Both the position numbers and the translations under genes were made by a program. 64,000 bases of DNA, from positions 23,188,001 through 23,252,000 of the forward strand of contig OZ287749.1 of the NCBI GenBank assembly GCA_965649765.1, read 5' to 3'. The notes under the pieces are model-generated. The model did not search any database, had not been told where the DNA came from, and saw nothing but the letters and a program-made list of their open reading frames with translations. Source of the DNA: Bispira polyomma. Lineage: Eukaryota. Shown here in pieces: positions 4,584-61,574 of this stretch. The stretch's first letter is position 1. Each line of letters opens with the position of its first letter.

Positions 4584-5936
4584 ATGCTGCAAGTCAATTC
4601 AACCTCAACTTTAGGAGACATAGATGGGAATGAGAAATCGCCTGATTCACATGGAGACTTGTACAATGGATACTCAGAAGAATATGAAAGTGATGATGTA
4701 AATTCTTCAACCATGGACAGACACGGCATCAATAACACCTATTTCTATGATGACAGTGATTTAGTGAAGGTGGTCTACAGTTCTAAGATTGCCACCACTT
4801 GTTTGGGAGTTGCTTCTATTATATTGAACGTCTTCTTCCTGGTTGCAGTTCAGACGTCAAAGGAGAGGCATTCCCCGTTCCACAGGTTTATGAAAAGCCT
4901 GTCCATTGCGGACATTTTGGCATCTTTGATGTTCATGCTGACACAGAACTGGCCTGAGGGACCGTTTTCCTTCATCTACCCCTCTGACCACTTTCTGTTG
5001 AGCCAACTGGTGCCATACATCTTCCGCGGGATGCCCTGGATGTTCTTCACCTGCTACCTGCTGACGCTCACCTGCCTCAGCATCAACCAGTACGTAGCAG
5101 TATGCAAACCCTGGAAGTACTCCATGATCTCCAGTCAGAAGTGGGTCACTGGCACTCTCTGCTCTGTATGGCTTCTATCCTCACTACAGATCCTGATGCC
5201 CAGCTTAGTGCTGCTAATCCTGGGTTGTACTACAGACCGCAGTGTGGCCATCAGACGACTCTACACCATCTCGAAACTAGAGATGCAACTCTGGATGGGC
5301 ATCTTTATGGCGACCACCTTCATCAGTATTGTCCTAAACTTTTTGATCTACCGGAAAATTCGGGAACTGAAATGGAAACGGCGGATGAGTCTGACTTCGC
5401 AGGAAACTCTGAACATTCGGATGAAGCAGGAAGCATTTATTACCATCACTTTGTTGTTAGTTACCGCAGTGCTACTCAGACTTCCATTTCCCATAGTTAG
5501 CATCACCATCATAGAATTAGACATGGCAATGTTAATTGGACAGAAAACCTCGGTCATCACTAATGCAGTGGTGCTGTTCCTCCTATTCAGTAACTTCTTT
5601 ACAGATCCAATTATTTACACACTGAGGATGAAGGAAGCCCGGCAGCTGTATAAATGGTGTTTTTGCAAATGCTACTGTTGTGGCTGGACAGGTGAAAGGA
5701 ACGGATCACGGCCATTAAAACTGCAGCAGGATAAGAGGAAAGCTTTCTGTTGTAGTGCTAACAGAAGTTTTGACAACACTGATCCAAGGGCCAGAATGAG
5801 TCTGACAGGGGAGAGAACTGAGATTACTATGGCTTTGGTTGAAAATGGGAATAAGTATACCCAGGAGTCATTTGGACCATCTGAACTGGCCCATACCAAA
5901 GATCCTGAGAACAGTTCACCAGAACCATCACTGTGA
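4584..5936 (+). CDS. Class A (rhodopsin-like) orphan GPCR, 450 aa, intronless CDS
   Basis: Seven hydrophobic segments; N-terminal glycosylation sequons; TM1 IILN, TM2 LSIAD, TM3 NQYVAVCKP, TM4 Trp, TM7 DPIIY; Cys cluster after helix 8. Confidence 0.93.
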   Translation: MLQVNSTSTLGDIDGNEKSPDSHGDLYNGYSEEYESDDVNSSTMDRHGINNTYFYDDSDLVKVVYSSKIATTCLGVASIILNVFFLVAVQTSKERHSPFHRFMKSLSIADILASLMFMLTQNWPEGPFSFIYPSDHFLLSQLVPYIFRGMPWMFFTCYLLTLTCLSINQYVAVCKPWKYSMISSQKWVTGTLCSVWLLSSLQILMPSLVLLILGCTTDRSVAIRRLYTISKLEMQLWMGIFMATTFISIVLNFLIYRKIRELKWKRRMSLTSQETLNIRMKQEAFITITLLLVTAVLLRLPFPIVSITIIELDMAMLIGQKTSVITNAVVLFLLFSNFFTDPIIYTLRMKEARQLYKWCFCKCYCCGWTGERNGSRPLKLQQDKRKAFCCSANRSFDNTDPRARMSLTGERTEITMALVENGNKYTQESFGPSELAHTKDPENSSPEPSL

Positions 5937-21140: not shown

Positions 21141-21460
21141 TGGATATACTACAGATGCCCTCACAAGGATACTGTTGGCACCAGAAAGTGAAAAGAATTA
21201 TTCTAACAACTGGTCACAGCAGCTTTGCTTTATATACTTATCGTTTTCTGTCCTGTACAGACTCTCCTTTCAAACCACCTTCTATTATTGTATAGTGAGA
21301 TATATTCTGTACTGCAGCCGCTTACATTCTGAGTGAGTTCTGTCAAAGCATGTTATTAAAAGACCCTAATTGACCATGTTAGAGAATAGGCTTTTAGTGA
21401 CCAGATGATTTTGTTTTATCCTTCTTATTTTTTCCAATTACATCGTTGACTTTTTCTACA

Positions 21461-21643
21461 CAGTCGTTTAAGTTGTGGGTGAAATTGAACCAATGTTGTC
21501 CTGGGCTAGGGGTGACCTTTAAAGGTCATAGTTATTGAGAGTGAGGAATCAGATGCTGTTTGGGATAATTTTTATTCTAACTACTCGTCTCTATATACAA
21601 CTGTACAAAAAATCATTTTTGATTAAAAATTTTTAAAATGCCA
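21461..21643 (-). repeat. E1 repeat B2
   Basis: Near-identical to 22438..22619; AATAAA on the minus strand. Confidence 0.95.
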
Positions 21644-22009
21644 TCATGGCTACATGAACAAGAACCAAGAACTGGCTAAAATACGAAAGGGGGTAAAAAT
21701 AACCCTGAAAGCATGTAAAGTGCTAAGATAAAAGTCAACCACCTAATTGGGCGACATAAAGTTGAGTACTACAACAAATAATATATATCGCCAACCACGT
21801 ACAAGGTGGGACATAAACAATAATACTAAGTCAAATGACATAAGATTACGTACTACAATAATAGATATAGTCGACCACATAAAGGTGACATATATAGTAG
21901 TAGTCAACCACGCATTCGGGCGACAAAATAACTCAGAATATCAGAGTTCAGAAGAGTAAAATAAGTTAGTGATTACTGGCTAAGGAATTTTGTTTTAAAA
22001 TTTAAATAT

Positions 22010-22151
22010 GAATGGGAGCTCGAAACGCTGGGCACCTATTCGCCTGCAGAAAGTCCTACCTCACAGAGCTCTTTTTCAACCCTGGAACCCTAAACGTGAA
22101 CTCAGAGGAAGGGTAAGAGATAAGACTTTCCACATGGTTAATGAGCTTCAT
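22010..22151 (-). ncRNA. Putative structured RNA in the E1 spacer
   Basis: 14-bp stem GAAAGUCUUAUCUC/GAGGUAGGACUUUC (2 G-U pairs on minus), inner ACCCU/AGGGU, loop GAGUUC complementary to downstream GAGCUC, and CUGC-AGGCGAAUAGGUGCC shared with E2 and E4. Confidence 0.6.
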
Positions 22152-22215
22152 CTAAGTCCGAAAAATTTAAATTCACTTTAACTTTAGCCTGTAAAAAGAG
22201 GAGTGGTGGGTGGGG

Positions 22216-22437
22216 ATTTCAAGGTGTTGCTACATTAACTTGCAACTTAATAATGACCAAATGTGAGAAAGGCGGGAAATTGATTTAAACCTAAGGGATT
22301 TGATTGGTAGTGAAGTGAAAGAGGTTCTGGTCTAGGATTGGTGTATCTGGGTAAACAATTCTTAAGTAGGTAAATAATACAGTAAGATATTACAACTTCA
22401 CGACTGACTAGCCATGCTTTGCGAGCAGTGACTACAA
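22216..22437 (-). repeat. E1 repeat A2 (abuts B1, forming the circle-junction sequence)
   Basis: Near-identical to 27680..27902. Confidence 0.95.
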
Positions 22438-22619
22438 CAGTCGTTTAAGTTGTGGGTGAAATTGAACCAATGTTGTCCTGGGCTGGGGTGACCTTTAAAG
22501 GTCATAGTTATTGAGAGTGAGGAATCAGATGCTGTTTGGGATAATTTTTATTCTAACTACTCGTCTCTATATACAACTGTACAAAAAATTATTTTTGATT
22601 AAAAAATTTTAAAATGCCA
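22438..22619 (-). repeat. E1 repeat B1
   Basis: Near-identical to 21461..21643; begins 8 nt after the YR stop. Confidence 0.95.
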
Positions 22620-22627
22620 AAGCCAAA

Positions 22628-23606
22628 TTAGAAAGTAGAAGAGACGAGGGATGCGAACGTTGTTGGAATAATTGTGGAAGCATGAGAGGTAGATTGAAGG
22701 TAAGACCAAACAGCATCTGATTTCCAGCATCCATGTTTTTGAATATGCTGAAGCTTAACATTAGCATTAAATGCCAAGGAGGCACCTGAGCGCCTGAAGC
22801 AATGGAAGGAATGCCCTTCTTTTGGGATTTTCAACTGAGTTAAGATAGAGCTAAGAGTATGCCTTAAACTCGAGTCTGAGAGGCACTGGTCTTTATTTAG
22901 TGGGTTTGCCAGTAATGGATAAGAAGGGGGGAGAGGATATTTATTAAATAGAGAAGTGGCTGCCTTCACAGGACAGAGCCATGGGTTTGAGAGTTCTGGT
23001 AGTTGTATGATGTCTGGGTTTTTTCTGGTTTGGTTAGTCTTACTCCATTTTAATATGAGGTGAATGCCTGGGGGGGCGAACAACACGTCAGCCCTTGTCA
23101 GGTGTCTGGTAGGGTCAAAGGGGAAACCTGATGTGGTGGTCAGGTTAGAAATGCGTAAAAAACCAAAATAAGCAAACAAAAAAGCTGTTCTGAATAAGTC
23201 AGGAAATTGAAACTGGTTACAAGCTTGTGAAATTTGTTGTAATTGGTGTAAATCGAATACCCCTTTGACCCGAGGTGTGTATTTCGAAGTGAGTTCTAAT
23301 GACCTCAAATATAATGGCAATCTAGGGTCATAAAGACCGGTTTGCTGAATGTTAAGAATTTTTGTGTTGTGCCTAATGGAAGCTAAGTAATTACTCAATA
23401 CTTTGTAAGAGACACCTGTTTGTGTCATAAATTCCAAAAAAGCTATAATGCTGTTAAAGCAAAGGTTTCCCTTAAATCAAAGTAAACTGTAAAGCTCAAA
23501 AAGAGTCTGAACTGGCTGTCATATTGTCTTTGTGTCCTAGGTCTGTGACTGTGTCTCAGCCATCTCAAAGCTCCTTTGATCAGTGAGGAGGCTGGGTCAG
23601 AAGTAT
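22628..23606 (-). pseudogene. E1 tyrosine recombinase (one frameshift near 23455)
   Basis: Catalytic set R (FLRISN), K (WSKTNQ), HxxR (HCFRR), W (GCW), Y (VWSY). The N-terminal part TSDPA..HRPRTQ is in a shifted frame. Confidence 0.9.
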
Positions 23607-23612
23607 CTGAAA

Positions 23613-26141
23613 TTACACATAAGTATCTAAGGTAAAAAATTCAATGGGTATGTCATGCATGATGAAGTTGTGTAGGAGTTCCTGTCTTATTGTGTTGTCA
23701 TAATGGTCTAATTCAAACCACCTAGATAGAGCGTCTGCTATTATGTTGTCTTTGCCAGGTATATGTCTGATAGTCAAGTCAATATTCATTAAGGCACAGA
23801 TCTGCCAGATGTTCCTTAAACACAAACCTAAATAGTCGTCCCTGGTTCTGGATGACTGTACGACAGACACCACAGCCATGTTATCCGATTGTATCTTGAT
23901 CTTTTTATTACTCCATTTGTGACCCCATAATTTGAAAGCTATGAGAATACTGACCATTTTGAAATGGACAATGGAAAGTGTTTGTTTAAGGAAGCATGGT
24001 AGAGGAGCTTTGAAAACCTCTAAACCAGAAATGCCACCGATTCCGGATAAACAAGCGTCGACTTGTAATGACACGTCATGTGAACTATTCAGGTATGTGT
24101 ATTTAGTTGTACCATTGAATTGTCTGAGAAAAGTTAAAAACCATTGTAAATCCTTATGAAACTCGCTTGTCAAAAGTACTGTTTTACTACTAGTAGACTG
24201 CCTTAATAAAGTTAACATTCTGTTCATGAATATCCGAGAATTCTTCACACAGCGCTGTATGTATAACAACTTTCCCAGTAGTGACTGGTACTTCTGTTTA
24301 CGTACTTTATGCAAGTATTTAAATTCCATACAGGTGTCAAATATGGAGTCTAATTTAGTTTGTTCAATACTGAGTGTTTGGAGGTCTATGTCAATAGTGA
24401 TGCCCATGCAAGTTACACGCTTACTGGGGGGAACTAGTTTCTTGGTATTAATAGGGAGACCTAGGTCTGCTAGGATTTCTTGCAAAGTAGTGTAAACTAA
24501 GTCAGCCTTATCTTCAGTCTCAACGAGTATAAAATCGTCGATATAGTTGTAAACTATATATCCTTTCTGTCTCATAATATAAGTAATACAATCAGAAATC
24601 ACCATAAAGGCCGCCGTGTCATGAGTGAGTCCAAAAGTGAGACTGAGATCAATGAAATAATTATTTTTCCAAAGGTAACCTAACTTTAAACAATCAAAAG
24701 GATCAATTCTTAAATTTCTAAATGCGTGAGCGATGTCCACTTCGCTAAGGTGGCCTTAGACGTTATCATATTTATTTTTAATTGTACAATCATTTACAGA
24801 TTGTCCAAGGGGGTGAGAAAGGTTTAGAACTAAACGACGCTGATCAATATCTTTAGGTACCGTTAATAAAGGTGAGCAATGTATATCCGCGTGAAGTTTT
24901 CCTAAAATAGGGCCCACTATGGTGCCCTTAGCTACTTCTGTAACGAAATACTTGTCAATGGCTTGTGGAAATGCCATAGCCGAATAATGGTTTTTGACAT
25001 TTATGACCTTCAATCTGTCCCTCTCATACAGAGATATAGGAAACCCGAATTCTACATACTGTAGAACGATTTGATCCGGATAATCGACTAAGTATTTCTT
25101 CCAATTGAGAACATTGAGATCACTTTTGATGGGGAAACGCGCTTGTCTGTAGTTTGGTACCTTAGTGGTCTTTATGATATCAGCTACTTCAAATAACTTA
25201 TCATAAGAAGTCAAGTCTACCTGTTGTCTGTCTGGTCCTATGAAGTTAAAATGGTTTCTCCCGTGAGGGATGAAGCCATAAGTTCTTTGGTCAGTAAGTA
25301 AAATGTCCTCATTCACAATTTCTTCCCTTATGGGCGAGTGCTGTATGTCATTGTTCTATAATACAACGTCCTGTGGAATGTTGGTTACTATATGTGTGTC
25401 CTCAGTTATTGTATGGTTCCGTGAAAGGAACTTGTCATTCACACGTGCGTTTATATGCTTGTTGTATGTTGTTTGCGTGGTTCGTCTACAAATGTTGTCA
25501 ATGATGGTAATATAATAATCAGAAGAAGTGATGTTTGTACGGGTATGGGTGACCTTCTTATGTTTTGGTAAAGGTCAAACCTTGCTATATGAAACAGTAT
25601 TTCTAACTAAAACAGGTACAGATACAGTGCAAACAAAAGTGATGGGCCACATTCTTTCTAGAGAGAGATCATGTTTCTGAAGTGACCATTGACCTTGAAA
25701 GAAAACCCAAGTGTATACACCTGACACACTGGAGTCAGCATTACAAACAATATAATACACTGGGCCTTTAAGGACATCATAACTGTGACTACTATACAAA
25801 TCAACCAAAAAAGAGGTTGCAATAAAATTACTACTGCCATGAACTTTTGCTGGAAATAACTTGTGACCAACAGGACATGAAGCGGAGTTGCTACTACACG
25901 AGACGTTATTTTGTCCATCTGTCCTGAATACATCACGAAAACAATCATTTAAGAACTGTCCATCCTTAAAGCTCATACTGTTCATAAAAATGTTCCTTTG
26001 GTTAACTAACTCAGAATTTTGCTTATTATACTCATGTCTTAAGTTCATGCTCTCAGAATGCTCCTGCTCTGCAATCTCGACATCCAGTTTAACATACTGT
26101 ATATAACCACTGGCTGTGGTGACTGTCGACAGTCCGCGCCC
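23613..26141 (-). pseudogene. E1 pol: unknown N-terminal domain, RT and RNase H (frameshifted)
   Basis: DIAHAFRNL, YIDD, and RNase H motifs DAC / SDN / NIIADALSR; split over ORFs 25575..26048, 24756..25316 and 23613..24740. Confidence 0.9.
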
Positions 26142-27509
26142 CTATTGGGGTGCGTTTGCGGGCACTGCAGGGCGTCCGTGAAATTTAAAACACTTGGATT
26201 CTGGATGTGCATTGTGCTTCTTATGCAAACGAAAACAATTGGCACAGATGTGTTTAAAAATGGCGTTGTTGCCCTCATGGTCTTTTTGATGCTGACACGT
26301 GTTCTTCTGATAGTGCCTGCATGGCATCTCATGCTTTCCGGTGGCCAAGGAGGAATTCGAGGAGGTTGAATTTGAAGATGAGCCGTTCGAAATTAAGGCC
26401 TGGGAATAGGACAGTCGGTTCATTGTCCACCTAGTTTCATCTACCCAGCTGAGGCGCCCCACTTCCACATTGTGCATGTTACATGCATACGAACCTCTGG
26501 CTACCTGCCAGGAGATATTAGAAGCATCTTTTAAAGTATCTTCTAACTGGATTAACATGGCGCGAGAAATAGTAGGGTTTCTCACTTCTAAGATGTTCTG
26601 CAACTGACCTGCAGCAAATTGTGACACAGTAAGCTCATTATAAGAAACTCGTTTCTTATTCACACCAGATAAACATGCTTCATTAGGCCAACGTTTCATT
26701 GGGTCGGTAACACACACTTCAGATACATTGTAGCGACCAAATTTGCGTTTAGTACTGAGCTTACCTTGAAGCGATTCGTCAGCGGCCCACGCCTCGTAAC
26801 GGGCTAATCGTTGTGAAACCTCGTTCTGTATCATAGCGGACTGCTTTAATACATCTGGAGTAGGCAGGATTGCATCCTGTAGCGACCTCTGAGCGTGGTC
26901 CTGTGTGTAACCCTCCCGTTGAGCTGTCAAATGGTCTGGTCGTGTTTATGGGAACTGAGTCTTGTAACGTGTCGGGTACGTGTCATGAGAAACGTGAGAA
27001 CGAAGATCGTTGACTCCTGTGTAATTCACTGCAGAGTTCTGAAACTGAGGGAAGCTCTGAGTAAATGGTCAAGAAGAGCCTATGTTTTGTGTAAAAGGTG
27101 CTGGAAGCTTAGGTGGAGCTGCCATCTGAGGCCTAATCGTCTGAGGTGTTGACGAGACCTGAGGGGAACATGAACGAGATGTCTTTAAGTCGGATACGTC
27201 TTCCTGTAATTTAGCTACCGTGGACACTAGTGTTTTCATCATAGACTGCTGCTCTGTGAAAATGTCTTTGTAAAACTGACCAAAACTCACGTGATCTTCA
27301 GAAATGTGACTCGAGTCGGCAACGGAGTTGAGCGTGCTGGTTTCACCTTCTGCTCCATGAACTTCAGTAGAAAAAACTCTGCTGGCTTTTGCCTCCGACA
27401 TAGCGTCTTCAATGACTAGACGACACCTATTACCCACTGGTCGAGGGTGTGAAAAATTACAGCGTGAACACAAAGCTACAGTCACTTGCTTCTTCTTCCC
27501 ACGGCCCAT
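26142..27509 (-). pseudogene. E1 gag-like ORF1 (interrupted between 27069 and 26930)
   Basis: N-terminal CSRCNFSHPRPVGNRC and C-terminal Cys/His fingers; homologous to the intact E3 gag. Confidence 0.85.
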
Positions 27510-27679: not shown

Positions 27680-27902
27680 ATTTCAAGGTGTTGCTACATT
27701 AACTTGCAACTTAATAATGACCAAATGTGAGAAAAGGCGGGAAATTGACTTAAACCTAAGGGATTTGATTGGTAGTGAAGTGAAAGAGGTTCTGGTCTAG
27801 GATTGGTGTATCTGGGTAAACAATTCTTAAGTAGGTAAATAATACAGTAAGGTATTACAACTTCACGACTGACTAGCCATGCTTTGCGAGCAGTGACTAC
27901 AA
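27680..27902 (-). repeat. E1 repeat A1 (putative promoter)
   Basis: Matches A2; two CCAAT boxes and TTTCCCGCC on the minus strand. Confidence 0.93.
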
Positions 27903-30843
27903 CTTTCTATCTCATAATTTTAAATAACTTTTTAAATGTTAACTAAATTTAAGATTGATGTAAACTCAATCTACCTCAAAATTAGGGCCACCTTCTATTG
28001 AACTCAGCTTAAGTTAGAGTCAACATCGTTTAAACATATACAAAGATTTTGAGAGTCACCGTTGTTGATAATTATAGTTTGGGGGCAATAACATTTTGCT
28101 GTCATACAAACTTTGTTATAATGGTTGGATCTTTTCAAAAACAGTGATTTGGACTAGACTTGTTTCAAAACATGCTCTTAGAAACATTTTCGTTCCTGCT
28201 CAAAGATGACATCATTATTAACCTAGTCAGATATGTTTTTGGTTTTTAATAATGTTTTGTAACAGCAGAGGTGTATTTGGCGAATTTAGCCATCACGACC
28301 ATAGAGGGGTCTGATTTTTTAGTTTGCCCTATTACAAAATATATTATATCAACCTTAATCCCTGGGGTCCAATTGACCAAGTTTCACTCTGTCTATCCAC
28401 CCACACACTTAACCATTCTCTTAAAAATATCAGGCTACTCCTGATTGAAAAAAACCCTCTGCTATTCACATATTTGTGAGAGTTATTAAATCTACCCATG
28501 CTGTTCCTGGTAGTGTTCCTGGTCCCATTAAGAAACAATGTTCATATTTCCCCCTAATTCCAACCCATTGTGTTACCTTTCACCCATTTCTATTGCATTG
28601 GCCATTACTATGTACACTATCAACAAGCTAATTAGTATCTTTGCTGTGCACACATAATTGCTAGAGTTATTAGTCTGCCCATGCTGGTCATCTTTATGAC
28701 CTGGTGGTTCTCCCATTAATAAACAATGTTCATATTTCTTCTAAATCTTAAACTCTGTATCTCAATGCTTTAATGTGGTTAGATTATTCTGATAATGTAC
28801 TTCAAGCTCTTAGTATATTTGTCATATGTGTGAGAATATTGTCATTCTGAGCTGACGGATAAAAACCAGACTTAGTTTTCAGATATCAGAAGCAACTCTT
28901 TTTAATAAAAATTGACCTTGTTCCCATGTAAGTCTTAGGTGGAGAAAAACTATTATCCAAGTCGTTCTACCAGTGTGTGAAGCTCATACTAGTAAATCTT
29001 AATCAGAAAGAAATATCTCAGCTAAACAAGTCAAGAGTAATTGAACAGGGGCACTGGTATGGACGTGTGTTTGTTGTGTGGAACCTAATGATTAATTTTT
29101 ATGACAGTACAAATAAAGGGATAAGATTACACATTCCAATTACCTTCACTTTTCCTTTGTATGTCTGTGTTTCTCGGTGTCTGCTAACAAATTATCGTCT
29201 GATCATTAAAACTAAATCTTATGTTTAACATTGGAGATAAAATCAACGGTAGTAAAGCCAAAAATATTAGTTATTTAGGTATATTTTTGAAGAATACAAA
29301 ACACAATACTGTATTACCATTGCACATTGTACATAAAGGTTGAGATATGGTGTAGCTGATCAACTCCTTATACCTTTTGACCTTAAGTCAAATCTTTATA
29401 TAAACATCCAATCTTCTGCTGATTCTTGTTCACATTCCTGCAAAAGTAAATGTGACACACAAATCATAGTTACACTAATAAACTCCTGTCTTGGGCAAAG
29501 TTTTGGTTACAGTTATTTTTGAATTTCTTCTGATAACAGATTCACGAGCTTTTACGGGAAAAAAACCTCTATAGTTATATTAAGTTTTCTGGGCCTATAT
29601 GCATCAGGGGGTAATTGTTTCTCAAAGATTTCATGTCCAGTATCCATTTCATTTCAGTGCAATTCTAATATTAAACTGGACCCTGATTTTAGGTATTGGT
29701 TAATTCGTTGCAGTATAAGATACACAATTTTGTGGAATTGGATTAAAGTGTCCTGTACAACGACCTTGTTTAAATGAGAATACATGTAAATGTTCAGAAT
29801 TAAAACCTTAATAATTGTCATGCAGGTTAAAACTAATATGATGTTTATAGGCAAGGATTTGTTTTTTCTCCATTGGATTTTTATTTACTCATTTTTCACA
29901 TCAGTGCGAGAATCTGGGAGGGCGAGGGTAGTCAACCCTCCATCAGATCTTTTTTACAAGTGCAGTATTGTTATAAATTCTTTAACAACATTTAAAAAAC
30001 TATATTAAGCTCTCCGCAATTGCATACCACTAAATTGGCCTTGGGGTAAGAAACATGGACTACCTAATTTTTTATATACTATATGCTGAACCTATTCAAC
30101 TCACCATAAGTGGCAAGGATTTTTGGCCCTTATCCCCAATGGTGGGCTAGCAAACCTTTGTGAGAATGCTAAGATATACTCAAGCATTTCTTCACTTAGT
30201 GGGATGCCAGTTAATGGTGCTCATTGGCTGTACTTTTGCAAATTGAGAAAAGGTAAATTAGAGCTCTGTGCCCTACCGTGCCTGGAGGTACTGTACTGGG
30301 TATACAGGTACAGTGCAATTATTAACATGCTGTAAACGGAGAGCAAATGATAATATAGTGTCTTAGAGGACTTTTCATCACTTTTATACTCGTTTAATTA
30401 TTTTTAACGTTATATGGGCCTAATGCATGAGAATAACATATATAGATATCCAAAGCTTGTTGCAATCTCCAAAGAAACAAATATCAGTTATCAAGACAAA
30501 CATAAAAATAATCACTTTAGGAAAAGTAATTTTGAGCCTAAGGTATGTTCTAATTTCTGTCCAGTCGTTTGCTGTTATACTGGTTTACTTGTCGGGGTGA
30601 AAAAAGAAGTCAAATGCCTGGTATTTTAGCTGCCTTCATGTTTTTAATAGACTGACATTGTGTATTATAATGAATACATGCCGGATGATGTATCTAAGAA
30701 ACTAATACAAATACACTAGGTATCTCCAGGTAAATTAAGTTATAAAAAACCCAGGGGCGATATTCAGCAAACGTCTCAGTCTTAACTTAGTCCTAAAGAT
30801 TTTGGTCTTTGTTTTTTGACTGACAAGGTTACGATTTTTGTCT

Positions 30844-31859
30844 CAGTCGCTTTCAAAAGTGGGTATATGACCTTTAAGGTCAGAAGTGATGACCTTGCAG
30901 GTTAGGAATTATGATTGTGACCTTGAGTTGATCAATTTGATGCAGTTTGGGACAAATTATTTTGTCATCAAAATTTCTATATACAGCTCTATGCAAAAAT
31001 TTTAAGGTTAAAATTTTTAGAAAATGCCTGTCATATAAACATGGCAAGTAATTACTTGGGGTGTAAGTTCCCCTTACAAATAAAATAATAAAATTACTTT
31101 AAAACATGCCTTATAGCAAGTATGGCCAACCTAGGCCTATGACAAGTAGTAAATATTAAGAACATTTATATTAGGCATACGTAAGCCTTGTAAATAAAAT
31201 GTTACTAAGCATACGGCTTGATGTGAGTTCTTGTACTCAAGTATTATTTGTGGTATGTGCTAAACGCTAATATATGTGTTTTCAAGATGGCCGTTGTACA
31301 GCCTACATTTATGTCAAGATTGGCTGTCTTACAGCTTGTAAGTGATGAGCCATTTGTGGTTTCAGGTAACTTTGCTGTTTGCCAGTACATTATGTTTAGT
31401 GATAAGTCAATTTCTATCTCAAACAAAATCTCCACCCAGATTGGAACCCGGGTCCTATGGCACCTATTCGTGTAGCAGTGAAGGCCCTCAGCTGCAGAGC
31501 TTTAATCGCCGGTAGCCCACACCAGGGGGTAGCTGCATGCTGAGGACCAGCACCACATGGATCCGGGGTCGGATCTGTTGGTTTGGACACGTGAGATATA
31601 TATAAAGACAAGTTTCTCGACCATACTAAGTTAAGGGTGGTGGGTAGGGTCAAATTTTTACTTGTTGTCTCGTTGCTTTCAAAGTTTATAATGCTAACAT
31701 AAAGGGAAAGGCGGGAAATCACCCAGGAATCGAAGTATTTGATTGGTCTTAATCTGCCAACTAATTGGCTTTAGGTTGGTATACAAATAATCTTACAGTA
31801 CACTTCTACTTTTTAGCGCCTGAAATGCCATGCAGACTTAATGTCTGCAGTGACGTTCA
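30844..31859 (-). mobile_element. E2: solo A-spacer-B unit of a Ngaro-like element (no ORFs)
   Basis: Starts CAGTCG like E1; B motifs GATGCAGTTTGGG and AAAATGCC; structured core closely matching E4; G-rich tract; GGCGGGAAA and CCAAT; ends GCAGTGACGTTCA. Confidence 0.85.
31444..31570 (-). ncRNA. Putative structured RNA in the E2 spacer
   Basis: Aligns without gaps to 60010..60136, with compensatory and G-U-preserving changes in the stems. Confidence 0.7.
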
Positions 31860-42496: not shown

Positions 42497-42704
42497 ACAC
42501 CGCAGATCAGCCACAACTAATAGGGCGGCAATATTAACAAAGGGCGTTGTTGTTGATATTGTGTTTATATGTTTTAATCTACTGTTTTAGTATTTTATAT
42601 AAACACCGTAAATCAGCCACAATTAAAAGGGCGGCAATATTAACAAACGGATGTTGATAATTTGTTTTATATGTGTCTAATTTACTGTTTTTAATATTTT
42701 ATAT
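42497..42704 (+). repeat. Two-copy ~105-bp tandem repeat in the E5 leader
   Basis: ACACCG..ATCAGCCACAA..AGGGCGGCAATATTAACAAA occurs twice. Confidence 0.8.
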
Positions 42705-42734
42705 TGTTGTACATTAACTCACTGTGATATAAAT

Positions 42735-43571
42735 ATGCCTAAAGTCAAGGTATACGGTTGTACGAAATGTGGTACTAAGCACGCCCGTCCGGTAAGCAGC
42801 AAATGTCAGGTCGTGCTATCAGAAGAAGTAGCTATTGAAGAAATTCTGTCGGATGAAGAAACTATTGACACCAGTTTGGCTGATGCTGATAGTCTGGCTG
42901 TTGTTTCCGGGCAAATATTATCACAGTTACAGGCTATGGGCCAGTTAATGGAAAAACTAGACAAGCAAGTTTCTGCAACCGAAATGACTCTTGCAGCCAC
43001 TAACTGTGTCAGCACTACTAACACACAGGCAAAGTCAGATACTGCTTCCAGCACCACTTCCACCAGTTCGAGTGGGGAGAGCACAGCGAATAGTGAAAAT
43101 ACTGTGGTACCAAGTGTACAGTTTCTTAAGCAGAATAACATTCAAAACCAAGTCGAGTTACGACTCACTGAGCTTAAGCAGTTGAACGAGAACTCGGTGA
43201 AAGGTAAGATCAAATCACAAAGGGGGGAGGTGTTGACGTCATAGTTAATCGCGTGGTGGAATGGCCTCAAAATCATGTCCTATCCAGGAACAAGACCGTC
43301 TTACGATGACCTAATTTTAAATCAGTGGGTCTGCAGATTCACACGCATAATACAGGACGAAAAATCTCCCGAAACCAAAGAGATCATGCTCGATTACATG
43401 GCCGGATTGATAGAGGATTTTTCCTGGGAGGCCACCAAAGCATGTCACGCGGTTGTATTAACAACTATGGAGATGGATAAGCTTACTTGGAGTGACGTCA
43501 AGCACGTGTGTGAAACCTGTAGTGGAACTCATAAAACCGCAAACTGTAGTAAAAAAGCAGCAAAAAACTAA
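42735..43571 (+). pseudogene. E5 gag-like ORF1 (frameshifted)
   Basis: CTKCGTKHARPVSSKC; IQNQVELRL..KGK; SYDDL..SWE..LTW, matching E1 and E3 gag. Confidence 0.8.
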
Positions 43572-45728
43572 GGGGCTACTGCAGAGATGCAGTGGCTGAA
43601 AATCTGGTTTATAGTGGGCAGTTTTACAGGACTGACTTTAGTGTGGCGAATAAATGTAGTTATAGTGAGGTTCTGAAACAAACACGGAGACCTGAAAGGT
43701 CACAGAGAAATCTGTCAAGTCAAAAGTGTCTTTCCAGGTCAAATCTAAATGGTAGGCACCATGCCAGGCGGGTCAAGTGTTCTAATGCTGATTTTAAAAA
43801 TGACTGTAACAGATCTATTGTCCCCCATAAGTTCACGTCACACAGTACCACCCAGCACAAGGGCAAGACTAGTGTTGGAGGGAAAAGCACTGTACAGGGG
43901 GAAACTGAGGGCAAATCCGTCAAATACAAATGTAAATGCATGTGTGAATGCAAACAATAACTCCAGTGGGGTCTCTGTCTATAATAGATTTGAAGTGTTA
44001 AACCAAATCGATGCCAATGGTTTAGAAAATCACACTGTTGGTGCTACCGTGTGTAGTCCAAAAAAGGAGCCAACAGGGGCTTGTAAAAATAATTCAGTTA
44101 GAAAACTTAAGGCCATCGCTGATGTGGTGGATCCTTGTAAAAGTATCGAGACTGAAAGCAGTACAAATAGTATTGAAACTGACAAATATGCGTTTGAGTT
44201 AAAACAAAAGGCAAATAAGAGGGAACTCCTGGATAAAGCAAAAAACTGTAAAACTTATTGTGCTTGGCGTGCTCAGAGCAGAGTGGCCTATGGCTTCACA
44301 CCACTGTCAGACTTGGGCTGCAGGGTGTGGGACCATGGCTCTACAAATTATAGTTCTGATATTTTTAGAATGCATAAATTACTCCGCCAAGATGGCAGAC
44401 AAAACTTTAAAGGGTTGCAATTACCGGTTACTTCTCAGTTAAAACCTGAAAAGTGGGCTCAGTACCTCGAGAATTACTGGGACTGGCAGTTACCGTTACT
44501 TATTAAATATGGCTTCCCCCTCGATGTCAGTCGTGACAACATCGATCAGTCGCATGAGGAAAACCATAAATCGGCAATTGACTTTCCCGAACACGTGGAC
44601 ACCTATTTTCGGGGCAATACTGGGTCCTTTCGACAAACCTCCTATAAAGAATATGCACTTCTCTCCCATGATGACCCGTGACAAGTCTAGTTCAACCAAC
44701 AGAAGGGTCATTGTAGGCCCCAGTTGGCCTCTTGATTGTTCTGTTAATGCGGGGGCTTCTGCGTGCGAGTATCTGGGAACAGAATTTTTGTTGTCCTATC
44801 CCTCGGTAGATAATGTAACTAGGGAAGTGGCAGAGCTGGGCAGAGGTTGCCATATCTTTAAAGTCGATATTAGTCGCGCATTTAGGAATGTGCCTATAGA
44901 CCCTGGGGATGTGGATTTGCTTGGTCTTAAATAGGGGTCCTATTATCTGGACAGATCGTTACCATTCAGATATCAGAATGGCTCCACTATTTTCCAGCAA
45001 ATTTCTGACTTGGTAAGACACATCATGGCACAGGAAGGCTACCATATACACGGAGGAGCTGGGGGAAATCAAAGCATTATGTAAGCAGTGGGAGGGTAAG
45101 AGTACTTGTACTAAGAGACAATTACAATCACTGCTAGGGTCCCTTCTTTATGTGTCGAAATGCACAAGATATTCTTGGGTATACCTCAACCACATGTTGC
45201 AAACTTTAAGAGACAATCACAGTAAGAAACACTTCCCTTTTAATAAAGATTTTAGGAGAGATCTCAAGTCGTTCCTCAGGTTCATGCAGCAGTTCAATGG
45301 AGTCAGTTTTTTGCCCATAGACCAACTTATGCACAGGTAGAGCTGGATGCCTGCCTAACTGGGATGGGGGCATCTATGATAACCAAGTATACAAGCTCTT
45401 AGTGGCCTTAAGGCTTTGGGCTTCATCCTGGAAGGGCAAACGTGTACTTTTTAAGTGCGATAACCAGGCCGTTGTCAGCGTACTTATGCATGGGGGCACA
45501 CAGGATCAACTTTTGGCCACCTATTCTCGAAATATCTATATGATTGCCAGTCAGTTTGACATTGATCTCAGAGTAATCCATATAATGGGAGTGAAAAACA
45601 AGGTGGCGGATTTGTTTTCCAGGTGGGACAAGACTAACAATAATCTCATATTGCTGCATGAATGGGTGGGACCAGTAGTATGGATTCCCATACATACAAA
45701 CCTCTTAAAGGTTGACAAGAGTATATAA
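43568..45728 (+). pseudogene. E5 pol (RT/RNase H), disrupted
   Basis: YGFPLD, NHKSA, KVDISRAFRNVPIDP, LDAC, CDNQAVV, NKVADLFSR. Confidence 0.85.
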
Positions 45729-46352
45729 TATTTTAAGATTGTTATTTGTATTTTGTGTCAGGTTCAAGTCCAGCGGGTGCACTGCTTACCACGTTAGCTT
45801 GTGACAGATTGCATACAGCCTTTGCTACGTCCACTTGGAAGGCCCACAGCAGTATGTTCAGGCTCTTTCTGGCCTTTAACATTTTCATGGATTGGCAGAT
45901 AAATCAGGTGAATGCGTCCCAATTACTTGCTTACTTGGAGTTCCTTAATTTTAACAGCGTCACCCCTTCCTACATATCTAACCACTTGGCAGCTATTAAG
46001 GCCAAGTTTAATTTGTTTCAACTAAAAACTGAGGTGTTCTCAGACGCTAGAATTGCCTATTACACAAAGGCCTTATTGGTAAATAGACCTCTTAAAGTGA
46101 AACTAAAAAGTTTATTTGACATTCTCCTGCTCTTGAACCTTATTCAGCCAGTCTATGTCACAAGCCTATGAGTGTGACCTTCAAGCCAGGTAAGGTTAAC
46201 TCTGATGCGTGATCAGTGGATGGTTGACCTTGGATGTTGGAAAAGACTCTGACTCTGTTTGGGATATTTATTTTAAGGCATAAAGTTTTTGCCTCTATAT
46301 ACACAAATTTTTAAGCCATGTTAAAATTAAAAAAGGAATGCCAAAGCCAAAA

Positions 46353-47323
46353 TTACAGGGAAGGAGGTATGATGGCGGCAAAAGTAGAAGGAATGATAGA
46401 TGAGGCATGGGAAGTTGATTCTAAGTATGACCAAACAGCGTCAGATTTCCAGCATCCGTGTTTTTGTATGTGTTGTGGCTTTATATTATTGTTGAAGGCC
46501 AGGGATGCCCCTGACCTTCTAAAGCAATGAAAAGAGTGGCCTTCTCTAGGAATATTTAAAGTAGTTAGCACTTTTCTGAGGTGTTCCCTTAGTTTTGTAT
46601 CTGAGACACGTATACCTTTTTGTGCTGGGTCTGCCAATAAAGGATTCTGTGGTTTTAATGAGAATTTTTGTTGAAAAGAAGTGAAGGCTCTGACTGGGCA
46701 GAGCCAAGGGTTGTTAAGTTTTGGTAGTTGGATGATGTTTGGTGAGTTTCTGGTTTGATTTGTTTTGCTCCACTTTAGGATAAGGTGAATGCCTGGTGGT
46801 GCTAAGATGACGTCAGAGATGGTGATGTGACGGGTAGGATCAAAGTTTGCCCCTGAGGTGGGAGTGAGGTTTGAAATTCTCAGGAATCCGAAATAAGCGA
46901 ACAGAAAAGCTGTCCTGAATAGTTCAGGACAGTATAAGGTTTCACATGTCATAGAAATTTGTTTCAGGTCGAAGATGCTTTTGACCTTGGGGGCAAACTT
47001 AGAGTTGATTTTTAATGATCTCTGGTATAGTGCAATTCTGGGGTCATACAGGCCCGTGTCGAGTACGTTAAGTAATTTGCAATTAAACCTGATGGCTGAG
47101 AGGTAATTGTTAATTACCTTGTAAGAAATGTTATTTTCTTGTAAGTATTCCATTAAAGAAATCACAGATGCAAAGTTAAAAGAATCCTGTAGTCGGTAGT
47201 ATACTGTGAAGGCAATGAACAATCTAAATTGGTTATTGTAGGCTTTCTGCGTCCGAGGTCTGTGCGTCTGTTGTAGTCGTTTCACTGCTTTCTCCAGCAA
47301 TGGTCTGGCTGAGTCAGATGTCC
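46353..47323 (-). CDS. E3 tyrosine recombinase (intact; predicted 3' exon of a spliced Gag-YR)
   Basis: Open 327-codon frame with catalytic R, K, HxxR, W and Y; no ATG at its start; TTTAG acceptor ending at 47324. Confidence 0.9.
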
Positions 47324-51590: not shown

Positions 51591-53214
51591 TGTGTCCTAC
51601 TGATATATTCAGAGTGTCCGTTTGTGTATGATTTCCACCACTTTATCACAATAAAAAATTACTCCACAATATGTAAAACACGTATATTTGTAAAAGTAAC
51701 ACGTAAAACACTAAAATAGGTAACACTAAAAGGTTTAAAATCGTTGTATTTCTTTCTAAAATATGTGACATTCAAGATGGCTGTCGTTTTCCTAACTTTT
51801 TGTATGCTAGCTCTTGTGTGTCTAGCTAATTTGTGAGCCCACAATGGGAAAGGCGGGAAAAACTTTGAGGTAAATAATTTTTTATTGGTTGTGTAGGTCA
51901 TGCCTGATTGGGTCCTAAGTTATAAACATTTGTTGTTAAGTGGACTGATGTAAACGTGTGATATTGTGCCTAGCATAGCTAGCTAGGAAGTAAAGGTGTT
52001 TTATTGTGCCCTCGACTGAAGGGTCATGCCGTGCCTGCAGTGACTACTAAATGTGACTGTACATACATGGGGCAAATTTTTAAGGCTGTATATCTCACCA
52101 GTTTCTTTAGCTTTCTTAGACTTTCTAATCCGTGCCCACATTCGGTGGCTGCATTTCCCCTTTGAAACATTTGGCCAGGGGGAACATCATGTTTAAATCT
52201 GGCTATGTCATACTATTAGTGAAATGGACTAAAGCAATGCAGAAAAGAGATTCAGTTAGGCTGCTTTCCCTTCCTGCCCTCCCAGGTTCGAGTTTATGTC
52301 CGGTTAAGGCTATCAAGGCAGCTTTGGCTCTTGCACCCCCTGGCCCTAATGCTCCCCTCTTCCAGTACAAACTACACTCCACCTGGATTCCCCTTACTGA
52401 TTCACATGTTCGTAGCCATTTAAAAAACCTCCTTCACTTGTTAAAATTGCAAGATTCTAATCTTGCATTTCACGCCTTCCGGCATTCAGGTGCCACTTTT
52501 GCTTACAACAATAATGTTCCCTTACAGGACATCCAGCGTCATGGCACCTGGACGTCGGATTACATCACTGACTCAGCTGATGTTGGTACCAAGGTGGCTG
52601 ACTTCTTCCAGGTTGCTTTATAACGTCTACACTAATTTGGTATTTGGGGTCTGGGACAATTCATGTCCCCTCTGTATAACAGAAAATGTTTTTCAAGAAA
52701 TATAAATACTCAATTAAATTAGAAAACCACTTTTGTTTGGGGCATAAGGTAACCTTACATTTGGCTAGTACATAACGTACTCATCCAAATTTTTATAAAA
52801 TTCTAATCTAATTTCAGTGAATGATTTAATCCTTTCACTTTATATATTAAACTTAACTTCATCTAACTTTTTACTTAGTTTATGGTAACCTCTAACTCCC
52901 TCTAAATTATTTTCCTATTTATGGTTACCTTAATCTTTTATCGGGCACTTTATGGTCACCTAAATTTATGGTTTCCTTAAACTCTCTGAAAATTCATTTT
53001 ACTCTATGGTTACCTTTAGTACTTACCGTGCTTTCCATGGTTACCCTAATTTATGGTGACCTTAAATTTTTCTACATTTATGGTTACCTTATGCCCCTCT
53101 CGCTTAACTGAATATAGTGAATGTTAGTCTAACCCTAGACACTAATAAAGTAATGTACCGCAATTGTTTTTCCTGTGTTAATAAGTTAAGTCACTTATAT
53201 AACTGGCCTAAGGG

Positions 53215-59609: not shown

Positions 59610-59990
59610 CAGTAGTCAAAAATATAATTTGATTTAATGCCAGAGAGAGAGAGACGTGTAAGAAGTTTGATAAGTTTTTGTGAGGTTTGGAAACTAGATG
59701 CTGTTTGGGATGTATTTATTTCTATCTACTGCCTCTATGTACAACTATACAATTAAAATTTTAGTTAATATTTTAAAAAATGCCAATATGGCTACATAAT
59801 AAATTACAAAACAAGAGTATGTTATGCGAAATATAAAGGGATAAAAAAGGTCCCGAAAGAACAACATAAAAGTTGAACACAAGAATACCCAGGATGACTG
59901 AGAGTGTTAAAATTGTTTATAAAAGCTGAAGGAATTGTATATATGAGCTTGTGTGTATATGAATCTTAAGTTCCTCACTATCTCTGACAA

Positions 59991-60150
59991 GACTCAACCT
60001 CCGAGGTCAGAACCCCGGTCCTGCGGCACCTAATCGCCTAGCAGTGAAGGTTCCCAGCTGCAGAGCTTTAATCCTCGGTAGCCCACACCGAGGGGTAGTT
60101 GCGAGCTGAAAACCAGCACCACACGGACCGAGGTTCGAACCCAGGTGGAG
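59991..60150 (-). ncRNA. Putative structured RNA in the E4 spacer
   Basis: Nested stems whose plus-strand C-A mismatches become G-U pairs on minus; hairpin CCUCGGU/ACCGAGG whose loop GGGCU can pair with downstream AGCUC. Confidence 0.72.
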
Positions 60151-60594
60151 TCACGTGGGCAAGTGAGATTATAATTTTGGGTGGAGGGTTGGGAAAAAGA
60201 CGTGTTGCTTACTTAACTTGCAACTTAATAATGCCTTTCTGTGAGAAAAGGGCGGCAAGGAGTTTATTCTGAAGGAAGGTGATTGGTTGCCTGGTTTAAA
60301 TGACCTAAAATCTGATTGGGATAGCTAGGTAAACAATTCTTAAGAAGGGTTTTACAGTAAAGTATTCAATTTTTTCTACTGACTTGCCATGCTATACTAG
60401 CAGTGACATCAACAGTAGTCAAAAATATAATTTGATTTAATGCCAGAGAGAGAGACCTGTAAGAAGTTTGATAAGTTTTTGTGAGGTTTGGAAACTAGAT
60501 GCTGTTTGGGATGTATTTATTTCTATCTACTGCCTCTATGTACAACTATACAATTAAAATTTTAGTTATAATTTAAAAAAATGCCAAAGCCAAA

Positions 60595-61574
60595 TTAGAA
60601 AGTAGAGGAGACAATGGAGGAAAAAGTAGAGGGAATGATAGAGGCTGCATGAGAAGTGGATTGTAAATATGACCAGACAGCATCGGATTTCCAGCATCCA
60701 TGTTTTTGTATATCTTGAAGTTTAACATTGGAATTAAAGGCTAGGGAGGCTCCAGAGCGACGGAAGCAGTGAAATGAATGACCTATGTGTGGAATGTCAA
60801 GGTGAGTGAGGATGTTCTTGAGTGTAAGCCTAAGCTTGGTGTCTGATAAGCAGTTTCCTCTATCACATGGGTTGGCCAGTAATGGGGCCATGGAGTGTAA
60901 AGGGTATTTGTTAAATAAGGCTGTGGCAGCTCTGACAGGACATAGCCAGGGGTTTGATAAGGAAGGTAGTTGAATGATGTCTGGATTTGTCCTACTTTGG
61001 TTAGTTTTACTCCATTTAAGGATAAGGTGAATACCTGGTGGGGCGAATACTATGTCTGCCCTTGTGAGGTGTCTTGTAGGGTCAAAAGGTGAACCGGAAG
61101 TAGTAGTAAGATTGGAAATTCTGAGGAACCCAAAGAAGGCGAAAAGAAAAGCTGTCCTGTATAGTTCAGGGAAGTGAAGTAAATCACAAGCTTGTGAAAT
61201 TTTGGCTAGTTGTAGTAAGTCAAACACTCCCTTTATTCCGGGGGTGTAGTTAGAGGTGAGTTCTAAGGACCTAGTGTACAAGGTCAGTCTGGGGTCATAA
61301 AGACCTGTGTGTAGTATATTCAATAGTTTGGCATTGTGCCTTAGAGCTGATATGTAATTTGCAATCACTTTGTGGGATTTCCCTGTTTGAGTCAGGAACT
61401 CTAGAAATGCCAAAATGGTGTTGAAACTGAAGGTATGATGTAAATCATAATATACAGTGAAGGCTAAAAAGAGTCTGAATTGGCTGTTGTATTGTCTCTG
61501 AGTTCTAGGTCTGTGGCTCTGTCGTAGTCTTGTGAGGGCACCTTGGATCAGTGAGTTTGCTGAGTCAGAAGTGC
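60595..61574 (-). CDS. E4 tyrosine recombinase (intact frame from the predicted splice acceptor)
   Basis: Open from TTTCAG|GC ACT TCT GAC to the stop; full catalytic residue set; no N-terminal ATG. Confidence 0.88.

What the first reader, a model, noticed from the sequence alone, without database searches (positions are those of the whole stretch)
22523..22722. Repeat B carries an antisense copy of the YR 3' coding segment, just after the poly(A) signal, co-varying per element
Seen: in E1, B1 22523..22539 (AATCAGATGCTGTTTGG) is the exact 17-bp reverse complement of 22706..22722, the YR codons for SDAVW. In E3, B 46232..46262 GGATGTTGGAAA[AGAC]TCTGACTCTGTTTGG mirrors YR 46431..46457 (sense GGATGCTGGAAATCTGACGCTGTTTGG); both partners carry TCTGAC where both E1 partners carry TCAGAT. 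E4 shows the same pairing imperfectly (60490..60509 with 60673..60692). On the sense RNA the segment begins about 7 nt after AATAAA, spanning the expected cleavage site. Inference: (a) the local hairpin masks the B1 poly(A) site so transcription reads through the B1-A2 junction to B2, or (b) an RNA 3' end in B anneals to the YR region and primes reverse transcription in cis or in trans. This resembles an internal complementary region in an element type defined by direct repeats.
Basis: partly seen in the sequence, partly recalled or inferred. Interest (0 to 1): 0.85.

Follow-up and report, generated by a model that had tools for sequence, protein, structure and literature searches.

The report
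Hairpin beside Ngaro retrotransposon poly(A) signal
These jumping genes carry the same RNA-end signal twice, and a short stretch right after it is kept complementary to the end of their own recombinase gene by matching mutations; most likely this hides the first signal so the full-length RNA needed for copying is made, but no RNA data could be obtained to prove it.

Summary
In these Ngaro-like tyrosine-recombinase (YR) retrotransposons, repeat B carries, 3-7 nt after AATAAA, an antisense copy of the YR codons K-S-D-A-V-W: 17/17 in E1, 20-30 bp with the outer helix. All 11 families sampled from this genome (65-79% identical) have it. On a tree, 10 of 14 YR-side changes come with a pair-restoring change in B; 0/500 shuffles match the covariation. 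Predicted pairing covers the usual cleavage zone at B1 (0.72-1.0) far more than at the identical B2 (mostly 0.3-0.45). Best reading (0.5): co-transcriptional masking of the B1 poly(A) site, HIV-like in logic but using coding sequence found only upstream of B1. The long pairing is lineage-specific: a young close relative (L061) lacks it, and distant Ngaro elements show only a weaker pairing to a G-rich motif at the B1 edge. It is not a DIRS ICR. I found no paper or earlier scan note on other DNA describing it.

The parts
22523..22539 (-). E1 B1 antisense arm, 7 nt 3' of AATAAA, over the expected cleavage zone
   Evidence: 17/17 reverse complement of the YR arm; predicted paired P=1.0 at +10..+20
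22706..22732 (-). E1 YR arm: codons G-C-W-K-S-D-A-V-W, two codons before the presumed catalytic Tyr; core 22706-22722
22547..22552 (-). B1 poly(A) signal AATAAA, inside the ~165-nt loop
   Evidence: sequence; present in all 11 family representatives
22572..22583 (-). Two TGTA motifs upstream of the signal (CFIm-type upstream elements, from general knowledge)
   Evidence: invariant TGTA columns in alignment A2; positions
22616..22627 (-). TTTGGCTTTGGC motif at the 5' edge of B1; G-richer in distant Ngaro elements, where it is the likelier partner of the post-signal segment
22439..22619 (-). Split direct repeat B1
   Evidence: 97.9% to B2
22216..22438 (-). Split direct repeat A2
   Evidence: 98.7% to A1
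21644..22215 (-). A2-B2 spacer, with a covarying structured stretch near 22015-22156
   Evidence: no Rfam match in relatives
21456..21643 (-). Split direct repeat B2 with its own AATAAA (21571-21576) and identical arm (21547-21563)
   Evidence: local P(paired) 0.28 at +10..+20
27680..27903 (-). Split direct repeat A1 (5' end of E1)
22628..27509 (-). E1 coding region: gag-like ORF1, RT/RNase H, YR; several frame breaks, longest YR frame 22628-23437
46431..46457 (-). E3 YR arm
46232..46262 (-). E3 B arm with 4-nt insertion, after AATAAA at 46267-46272; E3 has a single B
60673..60692 (-). E4 YR arm
60490..60509 (-). E4 B1 arm after AATAAA at 60516-60521; the weakest duplex of the 11 families
59689..59708 (-). 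E4 B2 arm, identical to the B1 arm

Best explanation
A split-direct-repeat element must transcribe through the poly(A) signal in B1 to include the B1-A2 junction and reach the identical signal in B2 (inferred from the architecture). As the RNA emerges, the segment at about +4 to +30 after the B1 AAUAAA pairs with the YR arm about 165 nt upstream, forming a 17-30 bp stem. The stem leaves the hexamer in the loop but buries the zone where cleavage normally occurs, so B1 is skipped or used less. By the time B2 is made, 0.5-1.1 kb later, the YR arm is taken and B2 has no local partner, so the RNA is cut there. Shown: sequence, position, covariation, predicted B1/B2 asymmetry. Inferred: that the RNA folds this way in vivo, that B2 is the site used, and that the stem represses cleavage.
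For: Arm starts 3-7 nt after AATAAA in 11/11 families; cognate duplex -32.5 against non-cognate -25.7 kcal/mol, permutation p 5e-6, not tree-corrected. 10 of 14 YR-side parsimony steps are shared with a pair-restoring B change (K3 x3, D3 x2, A3 x3, A2, S3). 90.4% of cells paired, 0/500 shuffles. The partner lies in sequence unique to the B1 side. P(paired) at +10..+20 is 0.72-1.0 at B1 and 0.28-0.77 at B2, six of nine families at or below 0.43. The constraint is tightest at the end nearest the hexamer. Distant elements repeat the geometry with a G-rich motif at the B1 edge (cognate -13.4 against -11.9, p 0.017, post hoc). Precedent: an RNA hairpin represses the upstream copy of the duplicated HIV-1 poly(A) site (PMC2645353); single-strandedness across poly(A) sites is associated with their use in plants (PMC7784297).
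Against: At equilibrium the YR arm prefers B2 in 6 of 9 families. L061, a young close relative with 99% identical repeats and a 64% identical YR, keeps a B arm of the same look but no YR match; only a short pairing of about 7 bp with the B1-edge motif remains. Mismatches are fixed in several multi-copy families. AAUAAA itself is not masked. Single-B copies show no clear link to weaker stems.
Confidence: 0.5

Rival explanations
1. Primer and primer-binding site, the reverse of the reader's (b). The B2 arm near the RNA 3' end is the binding site; an RNA piece ending at the YR ...GUUUGG-3', cut from a second RNA molecule, primes minus-strand DNA toward AAUAAA, spacer, A2, B1 and the ORFs, as in Tf1 self-priming.
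For: The polarity would copy the whole RNA (inference). The inner end of the stem is at the W codon in 9 of 11 families, like a fixed primer end. YR-B2 pairing is favoured at equilibrium. The primer of DIRS-order elements is unknown (PMC7192593). Self-priming with RNase H cleavage is known for Tf1 (PMC4600332).
Against: It needs cleavage inside the YR frame, which would break a cis template, and a poly(A) site beyond about +25. Fixed mismatches show the primer is not copied into B. The pairing is absent in L061 and distant lineages, unexpected for an essential priming step.
Confidence: 0.15
2. The stem acts during reverse transcription, in RNA or single-stranded cDNA, as a pause or bridge that sets where strand transfer between B copies happens or ends.
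For: DIRS-1 cDNA is single-stranded (PMC7192593). The arm sits where the RNA end and the regenerated 3' part of B must meet (inference). G-U counts do not single out one strand.
Against: B1 and B2 share no family-wide differences that mark a transfer point at the arm. Direct-repeat homology alone could guide transfer.
Confidence: 0.13
3. No function: an old fold-back duplication of YR sequence into B, refreshed now and then by template switching or hairpin-templated repair, which mimics compensatory change.
For: The 27-nt reach over G-C-W codons suggests a templated origin. The arm has decayed in L061 and partly in E4 (recoding control p 0.26). Synonymous change in the YR arm is only mildly reduced (S 3, V 2 steps against a mean of 4.3), and the within-family deficit is not significant on the YR side (p 0.11).
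Against: Mismatches, wobbles and bulges persist across many young copies. F10 G-U beside F6 G-C looks stepwise. The position next to AATAAA is fixed while the rest of B diverges; B-arm polymorphism is 6/85 against 80/365 sites downstream (p 0.001 with F1, 0.09 without).
Confidence: 0.12
4. One reading: an RNA 3' end inside B folds onto the YR arm and is extended by RT.
For: The geometry allows it; a 3' hairpin was suggested as primer for DIRS-1 (PMC7192593). It could explain how the arm first arose, and perhaps some of the 12 single-B copies.
Against: Extension runs upstream from the YR arm and leaves A2-spacer-B2 uncopied (inference), yet most copies run on into A2 (41 of 53). A poly(A) tail would have to be removed first.
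Confidence: 0.06

Closest known systems
Ngaro-like YR retrotransposons (order DIRS)
   Same: A1-gag-RT/RH-YR-B1-A2-B2 split direct repeats, no room for a methyltransferase domain (definitions in PMC9210276, PMC4157794).
   Different: No paper I could search describes an antisense copy of YR coding sequence in B, or how B1 is read through. The founding papers were not held.
HIV-1 polyA hairpin
   Same: An RNA stem represses the upstream copy of a duplicated poly(A) site (PMC2645353).
   Different: The HIV hairpin encloses AAUAAA, exists at both ends and is overcome by 3' enhancers. Here the partner is coding sequence unique to the first copy, about 165 nt away, and the stem covers the cleavage zone rather than the hexamer. 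Function here is untested.
DIRS-1 internal complementary region (ICR)
   Same: An internal stretch complementary to part of a terminal repeat.
   Different: The ICR matches the outer ends of inverted repeats and acts after first-strand synthesis (PMC7192593). Here the match is mid-repeat, to coding sequence, in a direct-repeat element.
Tf1/sushi self-priming LTR retrotransposons
   Same: An element-encoded RNA segment complementary to another part of the same RNA (PMC4600332).
   Different: The Tf1 primer is the 5' end of the RNA and its binding site follows the 5' LTR. Here both arms are at the 3' end, one inside a gene.

Membership tests
Ngaro-like retrotransposon | Split direct repeats A1...B1 A2 B2 downstream of YR | tested here: met
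   E1: A1/A2 98.7%, B1/B2 97.9%; same layout in most loci
Ngaro-like retrotransposon | gag-like, RT/RNase H and YR ORFs in that order, same strand | tested here: met
   RVT_1 E 1.3e-8, RNase H-like RVT_3 weak, Phage_integrase weak and below cut-off; R, H-x-x-R, W and Y columns conserved. ORF1 is called gag-like by position only.
Ngaro-like retrotransposon | No methyltransferase domain after RNase H | tested here: met
   In E3 the RNase H match is at 704-784 of an 818-aa frame that abuts the YR frame; no MT hit
Ngaro-like retrotransposon | RT groups with reference Ngaro elements in a tree | not tested
   No reference Ngaro sequences were available from the tools
DIRS-1 ICR | Inverted terminal repeats | tested here: not met
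   Repeats are direct
DIRS-1 ICR | Internal region complementary to both outer ends of the element | tested here: not met
   The B arm lies about 85-105 nt inside the B 3' end and its partner is YR coding sequence
HIV-type poly(A)-masking hairpin | AAUAAA enclosed in the hairpin | tested here: not met
   Hexamer P(paired) about the same at B1 and B2; it is the +10..+20 zone that is paired
HIV-type poly(A)-masking hairpin | Structure represses the upstream site experimentally | not testable with these tools
   No RNA reads and no reporter
Tf1-type self-priming | Primer is the 5' end of the transcript, binding just after the 5' repeat | tested here: not met
   The best partner over the whole element is the YR arm
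Tf1-type self-priming | RNase H cleavage creates the primer 3' end | not testable with these tools
   Needs biochemistry or RNA-end mapping

The most novel reading that the evidence does not exclude
The B arm is the unknown primer-binding site of split-direct-repeat YR retrotransposons, and the primer is cut from the element's own upstream RNA (YR codons here, the G-rich B1-edge motif in other lineages): a self-priming route that uses an internal fragment.
Probability: 0.15. Interest if true: 0.9.

Novelty: new variant of a known kind. Interest (0 to 1): 0.62.

Why it matters
Elements with split direct repeats (Ngaro, PAT, VIPER) must read through one poly(A) signal to stop at an identical one downstream, and must prime reverse transcription without a known primer; I found neither step explained in the papers searched. 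This stem is a small, defined cis-element with natural compensatory alleles, so both questions can be tested with a 300-nt fragment. It also shows codons next to the recombinase active site doing double duty as RNA structure, and a partner that seems to have moved between lineages.

Tried and rejected
Long-range partners in RT/RNase H of distant elements looked promising by eye but were mostly not above shuffles; only L062 stood out (z -3.4), at a site not shared by its relatives, so I do not claim them. Viral contigs held no relatives. Rfam had no match for the tails. No poly(A)-tailed retrocopies and no shared B1/B2 differences were found to map the RNA end. The p 0.04 link between single-B copies and weak stems is an artefact of a mis-registered L051 (-5.3; the right value is -32.8); corrected by hand the means are about equal (-31.8 against -31.6). 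One search used a structure off by one column; one search is the valid run. The plus-strand distant element E2 shows no YR-B pairing, but its B could not be defined. The original Ngaro, PAT and TOC1 papers were not held.

Full report
The setting. The window holds three related minus-strand YR retrotransposons (E1, E3, E4) and a distant plus-strand one (E2) into whose recombinase gene E3 has inserted. E1 is laid out as A1 (27903-27680), gag-like, RT/RNase H, YR (stop at 22628), B1 (22619-22439), A2 (22438-22216), a 570-nt spacer and B2 (21643-21456); A1/A2 are 98.7% and B1/B2 97.9% identical. With RVT_1 and weak RNase H and integrase matches and no room for a methyltransferase, this fits the published Ngaro definition (PMC9210276, PMC4157794). 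An RT tree with reference elements was not made. The host is a 1.04-Gb eukaryotic genome with at least 143 such YR matches.

The observation. 22523-22539 is the exact reverse complement of 22706-22722; about 0.005 such repeats are expected by chance in the window. On the sense strand the arm begins 7 nt after AATAAA, which is preceded by two conserved TGTA motifs. Scanned against the whole element, the YR arm is the best partner in all three (z -6.2, -2.6, -4.4).

Covariation. Sixty loci from the same genome plus E4 fall into 11 families at 65-79% nucleotide identity, one pair at 61-64%. Every family has the arm, 3-7 nt after AATAAA, closing a loop of 160-181 nt. Own pairs are more stable than mixed pairs (-32.5 against -25.7 kcal/mol, permutation p 5e-6, ignoring relatedness). 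In 10 of 11 families the real codons pair better than at least 94% of synonymous recodings; E4 is the exception. On the MAFFT alignment 90.4% of cells pair, five columns change on both sides, and no shuffle of 500 reaches the covariation score. To allow for relatedness I mapped changes on a tree built from upstream sequence, with bulges removed by hand in F4, F7 and F9. Of 14 YR-side steps, 10 coincide with a B change that restores a Watson-Crick pair: Lys third position three times, Asp twice, Ala three times, Ser at least once, and an Ala-to-Val replacement once. F10 has G-U where its sister F6 has G-C. Uncompensated changes exist too: Val third position in F0 and F8, Ser in F0 and F3, and B-only breaks, mostly at the outer end. 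The full duplex reaches 20-30 pairs over the G-C-W codons, which suggests the arm began as a fold-back copy (inference).

B1 against B2. The two B copies are near identical within each element, so anything that tells them apart must lie outside B. The YR arm does. In local folds the +10..+20 zone after AAUAAA, where cleavage usually falls (general knowledge), is paired with P 0.72-1.0 at B1, always to the YR arm, and 0.28-0.77 at B2, at or below 0.43 in six of nine families; the hexamer shows no such difference. When the whole 3' end is folded at equilibrium the YR arm takes B2 in six of nine families. Masking therefore depends on B1 being made first, and a later YR-B2 pairing is possible.

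How general. Outside this genome the long pairing is not found. L061, the closest outside relative (YR 64% identical, repeats 99% identical, so young), has a B segment that resembles the F7 arm but a YR that no longer matches. This is the main counter-example. Across about 20 more distant elements from ENA and JGI assemblies two short motifs recur: a TTTGGG-type run at the 5' edge of B1 and a CCCA-type run about 3-15 nt after AATAAA. They are complementary, partly unique to the B1 side, and appear to change together in places (L077, L082, and by eye L075). Own pairs beat mixed pairs modestly (-13.4 against -11.9, p 0.017), but the motif was chosen after looking, and only L082 is significant alone. 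In E1 and E4 that motif is G-poorer and pairs weakly (-6). A consistent but unproven story is that an ancestral short stem at the B1 edge was replaced here by a longer stem to the YR codons.

Mechanism. I favour co-transcriptional masking of the B1 cleavage zone (0.5): it explains the position, the B1-only partner and the tight inner end, and has a precedent in the HIV-1 polyA hairpin (PMC2645353), though the architecture differs. The reverse arrangement, a YR-derived RNA priming on the B2 arm, has the right polarity and a Tf1 precedent (PMC4600332), and the primer for this order is unknown (PMC7192593). It needs a cut inside the YR frame and should be universal, which the long pairing is not (0.15). 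A role in strand transfer (0.13) and functionless templated refreshing (0.12) remain; the second cannot be excluded by covariation alone.

Limits. F7, F9, F10 and F0 rest on single copies.

Novelty. Searches for Ngaro with poly(A) signal, stem-loop or primer terms returned nothing describing this feature, but the founding papers were not held. The scan's own notes cover the junction hairpin, the spacer RNA and a spliced Gag-YR message, not this stem. Verdict: a real, covarying RNA-type stem in a known element type, probably a new version of poly(A)-site masking, untested; interest 0.62.

Noticed in passing
window 22015-22156, 59985-60175, 31405-31600; L023, L024, L037: A structured stretch in the A2-B2 spacer with covarying outer helices, in F0, F1, F2, F3 and F5 and absent from F4, F6, F8 and F10; no Rfam match. 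The scan noted it earlier.
   Followed up: partly
E3 and L003, L007, L032, L034, L036, L039, L044, L045, L049, L051, L054, L058: About a fifth of the copies end exactly after a single B with no A2-B2, including five of six readable F4 copies. They could come from B1-ended RNA, template switching or recombination; no link to stem strength was seen.
   Followed up: partly
window 22616-22627 and the B1 edge of L061-L088: The conserved G-rich motif sits at the 5' boundary of B1 in most elements, where a plus-strand primer site (PPT analogue) would be expected.
   Followed up: partly
window about 22200-22216; L062 8258, L063 8201, L061 8361, L076 4300: A CCCACCC-type motif directly follows A2 in nearly all elements, where a primer-binding site follows an LTR; it is loosely complementary to the G-rich B1-edge motif.
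   Followed up: no
window about 22489-22506 and the 3' half of B in most families: TGACC...GGTCA inverted repeats recur in the 3' half of B despite low overall identity.
   Followed up: no
window 21644-21654 and before B2 in F0, F1, F3, F4, F5: GCCA just before B2 can pair with the TGGC that opens B, a small B2-only hairpin.
   Followed up: no
window 42700-46170 and 52050-52623 (+): A distant YR element (E2, 30-40% protein identity) split by the E3 insertion inside its YR gene; a 16-bp inverted repeat at 52739-53097 lies in its tail.
   Followed up: partly
window 31400-31830 (-): A solitary A repeat plus spacer remnant of another family, with no YR or B arm next to it.
   Followed up: no
window 4584-5936 (+): Single-exon rhodopsin-family GPCR ORF of 450 aa (7tm_1, E 8.5e-18).
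   Followed up: no
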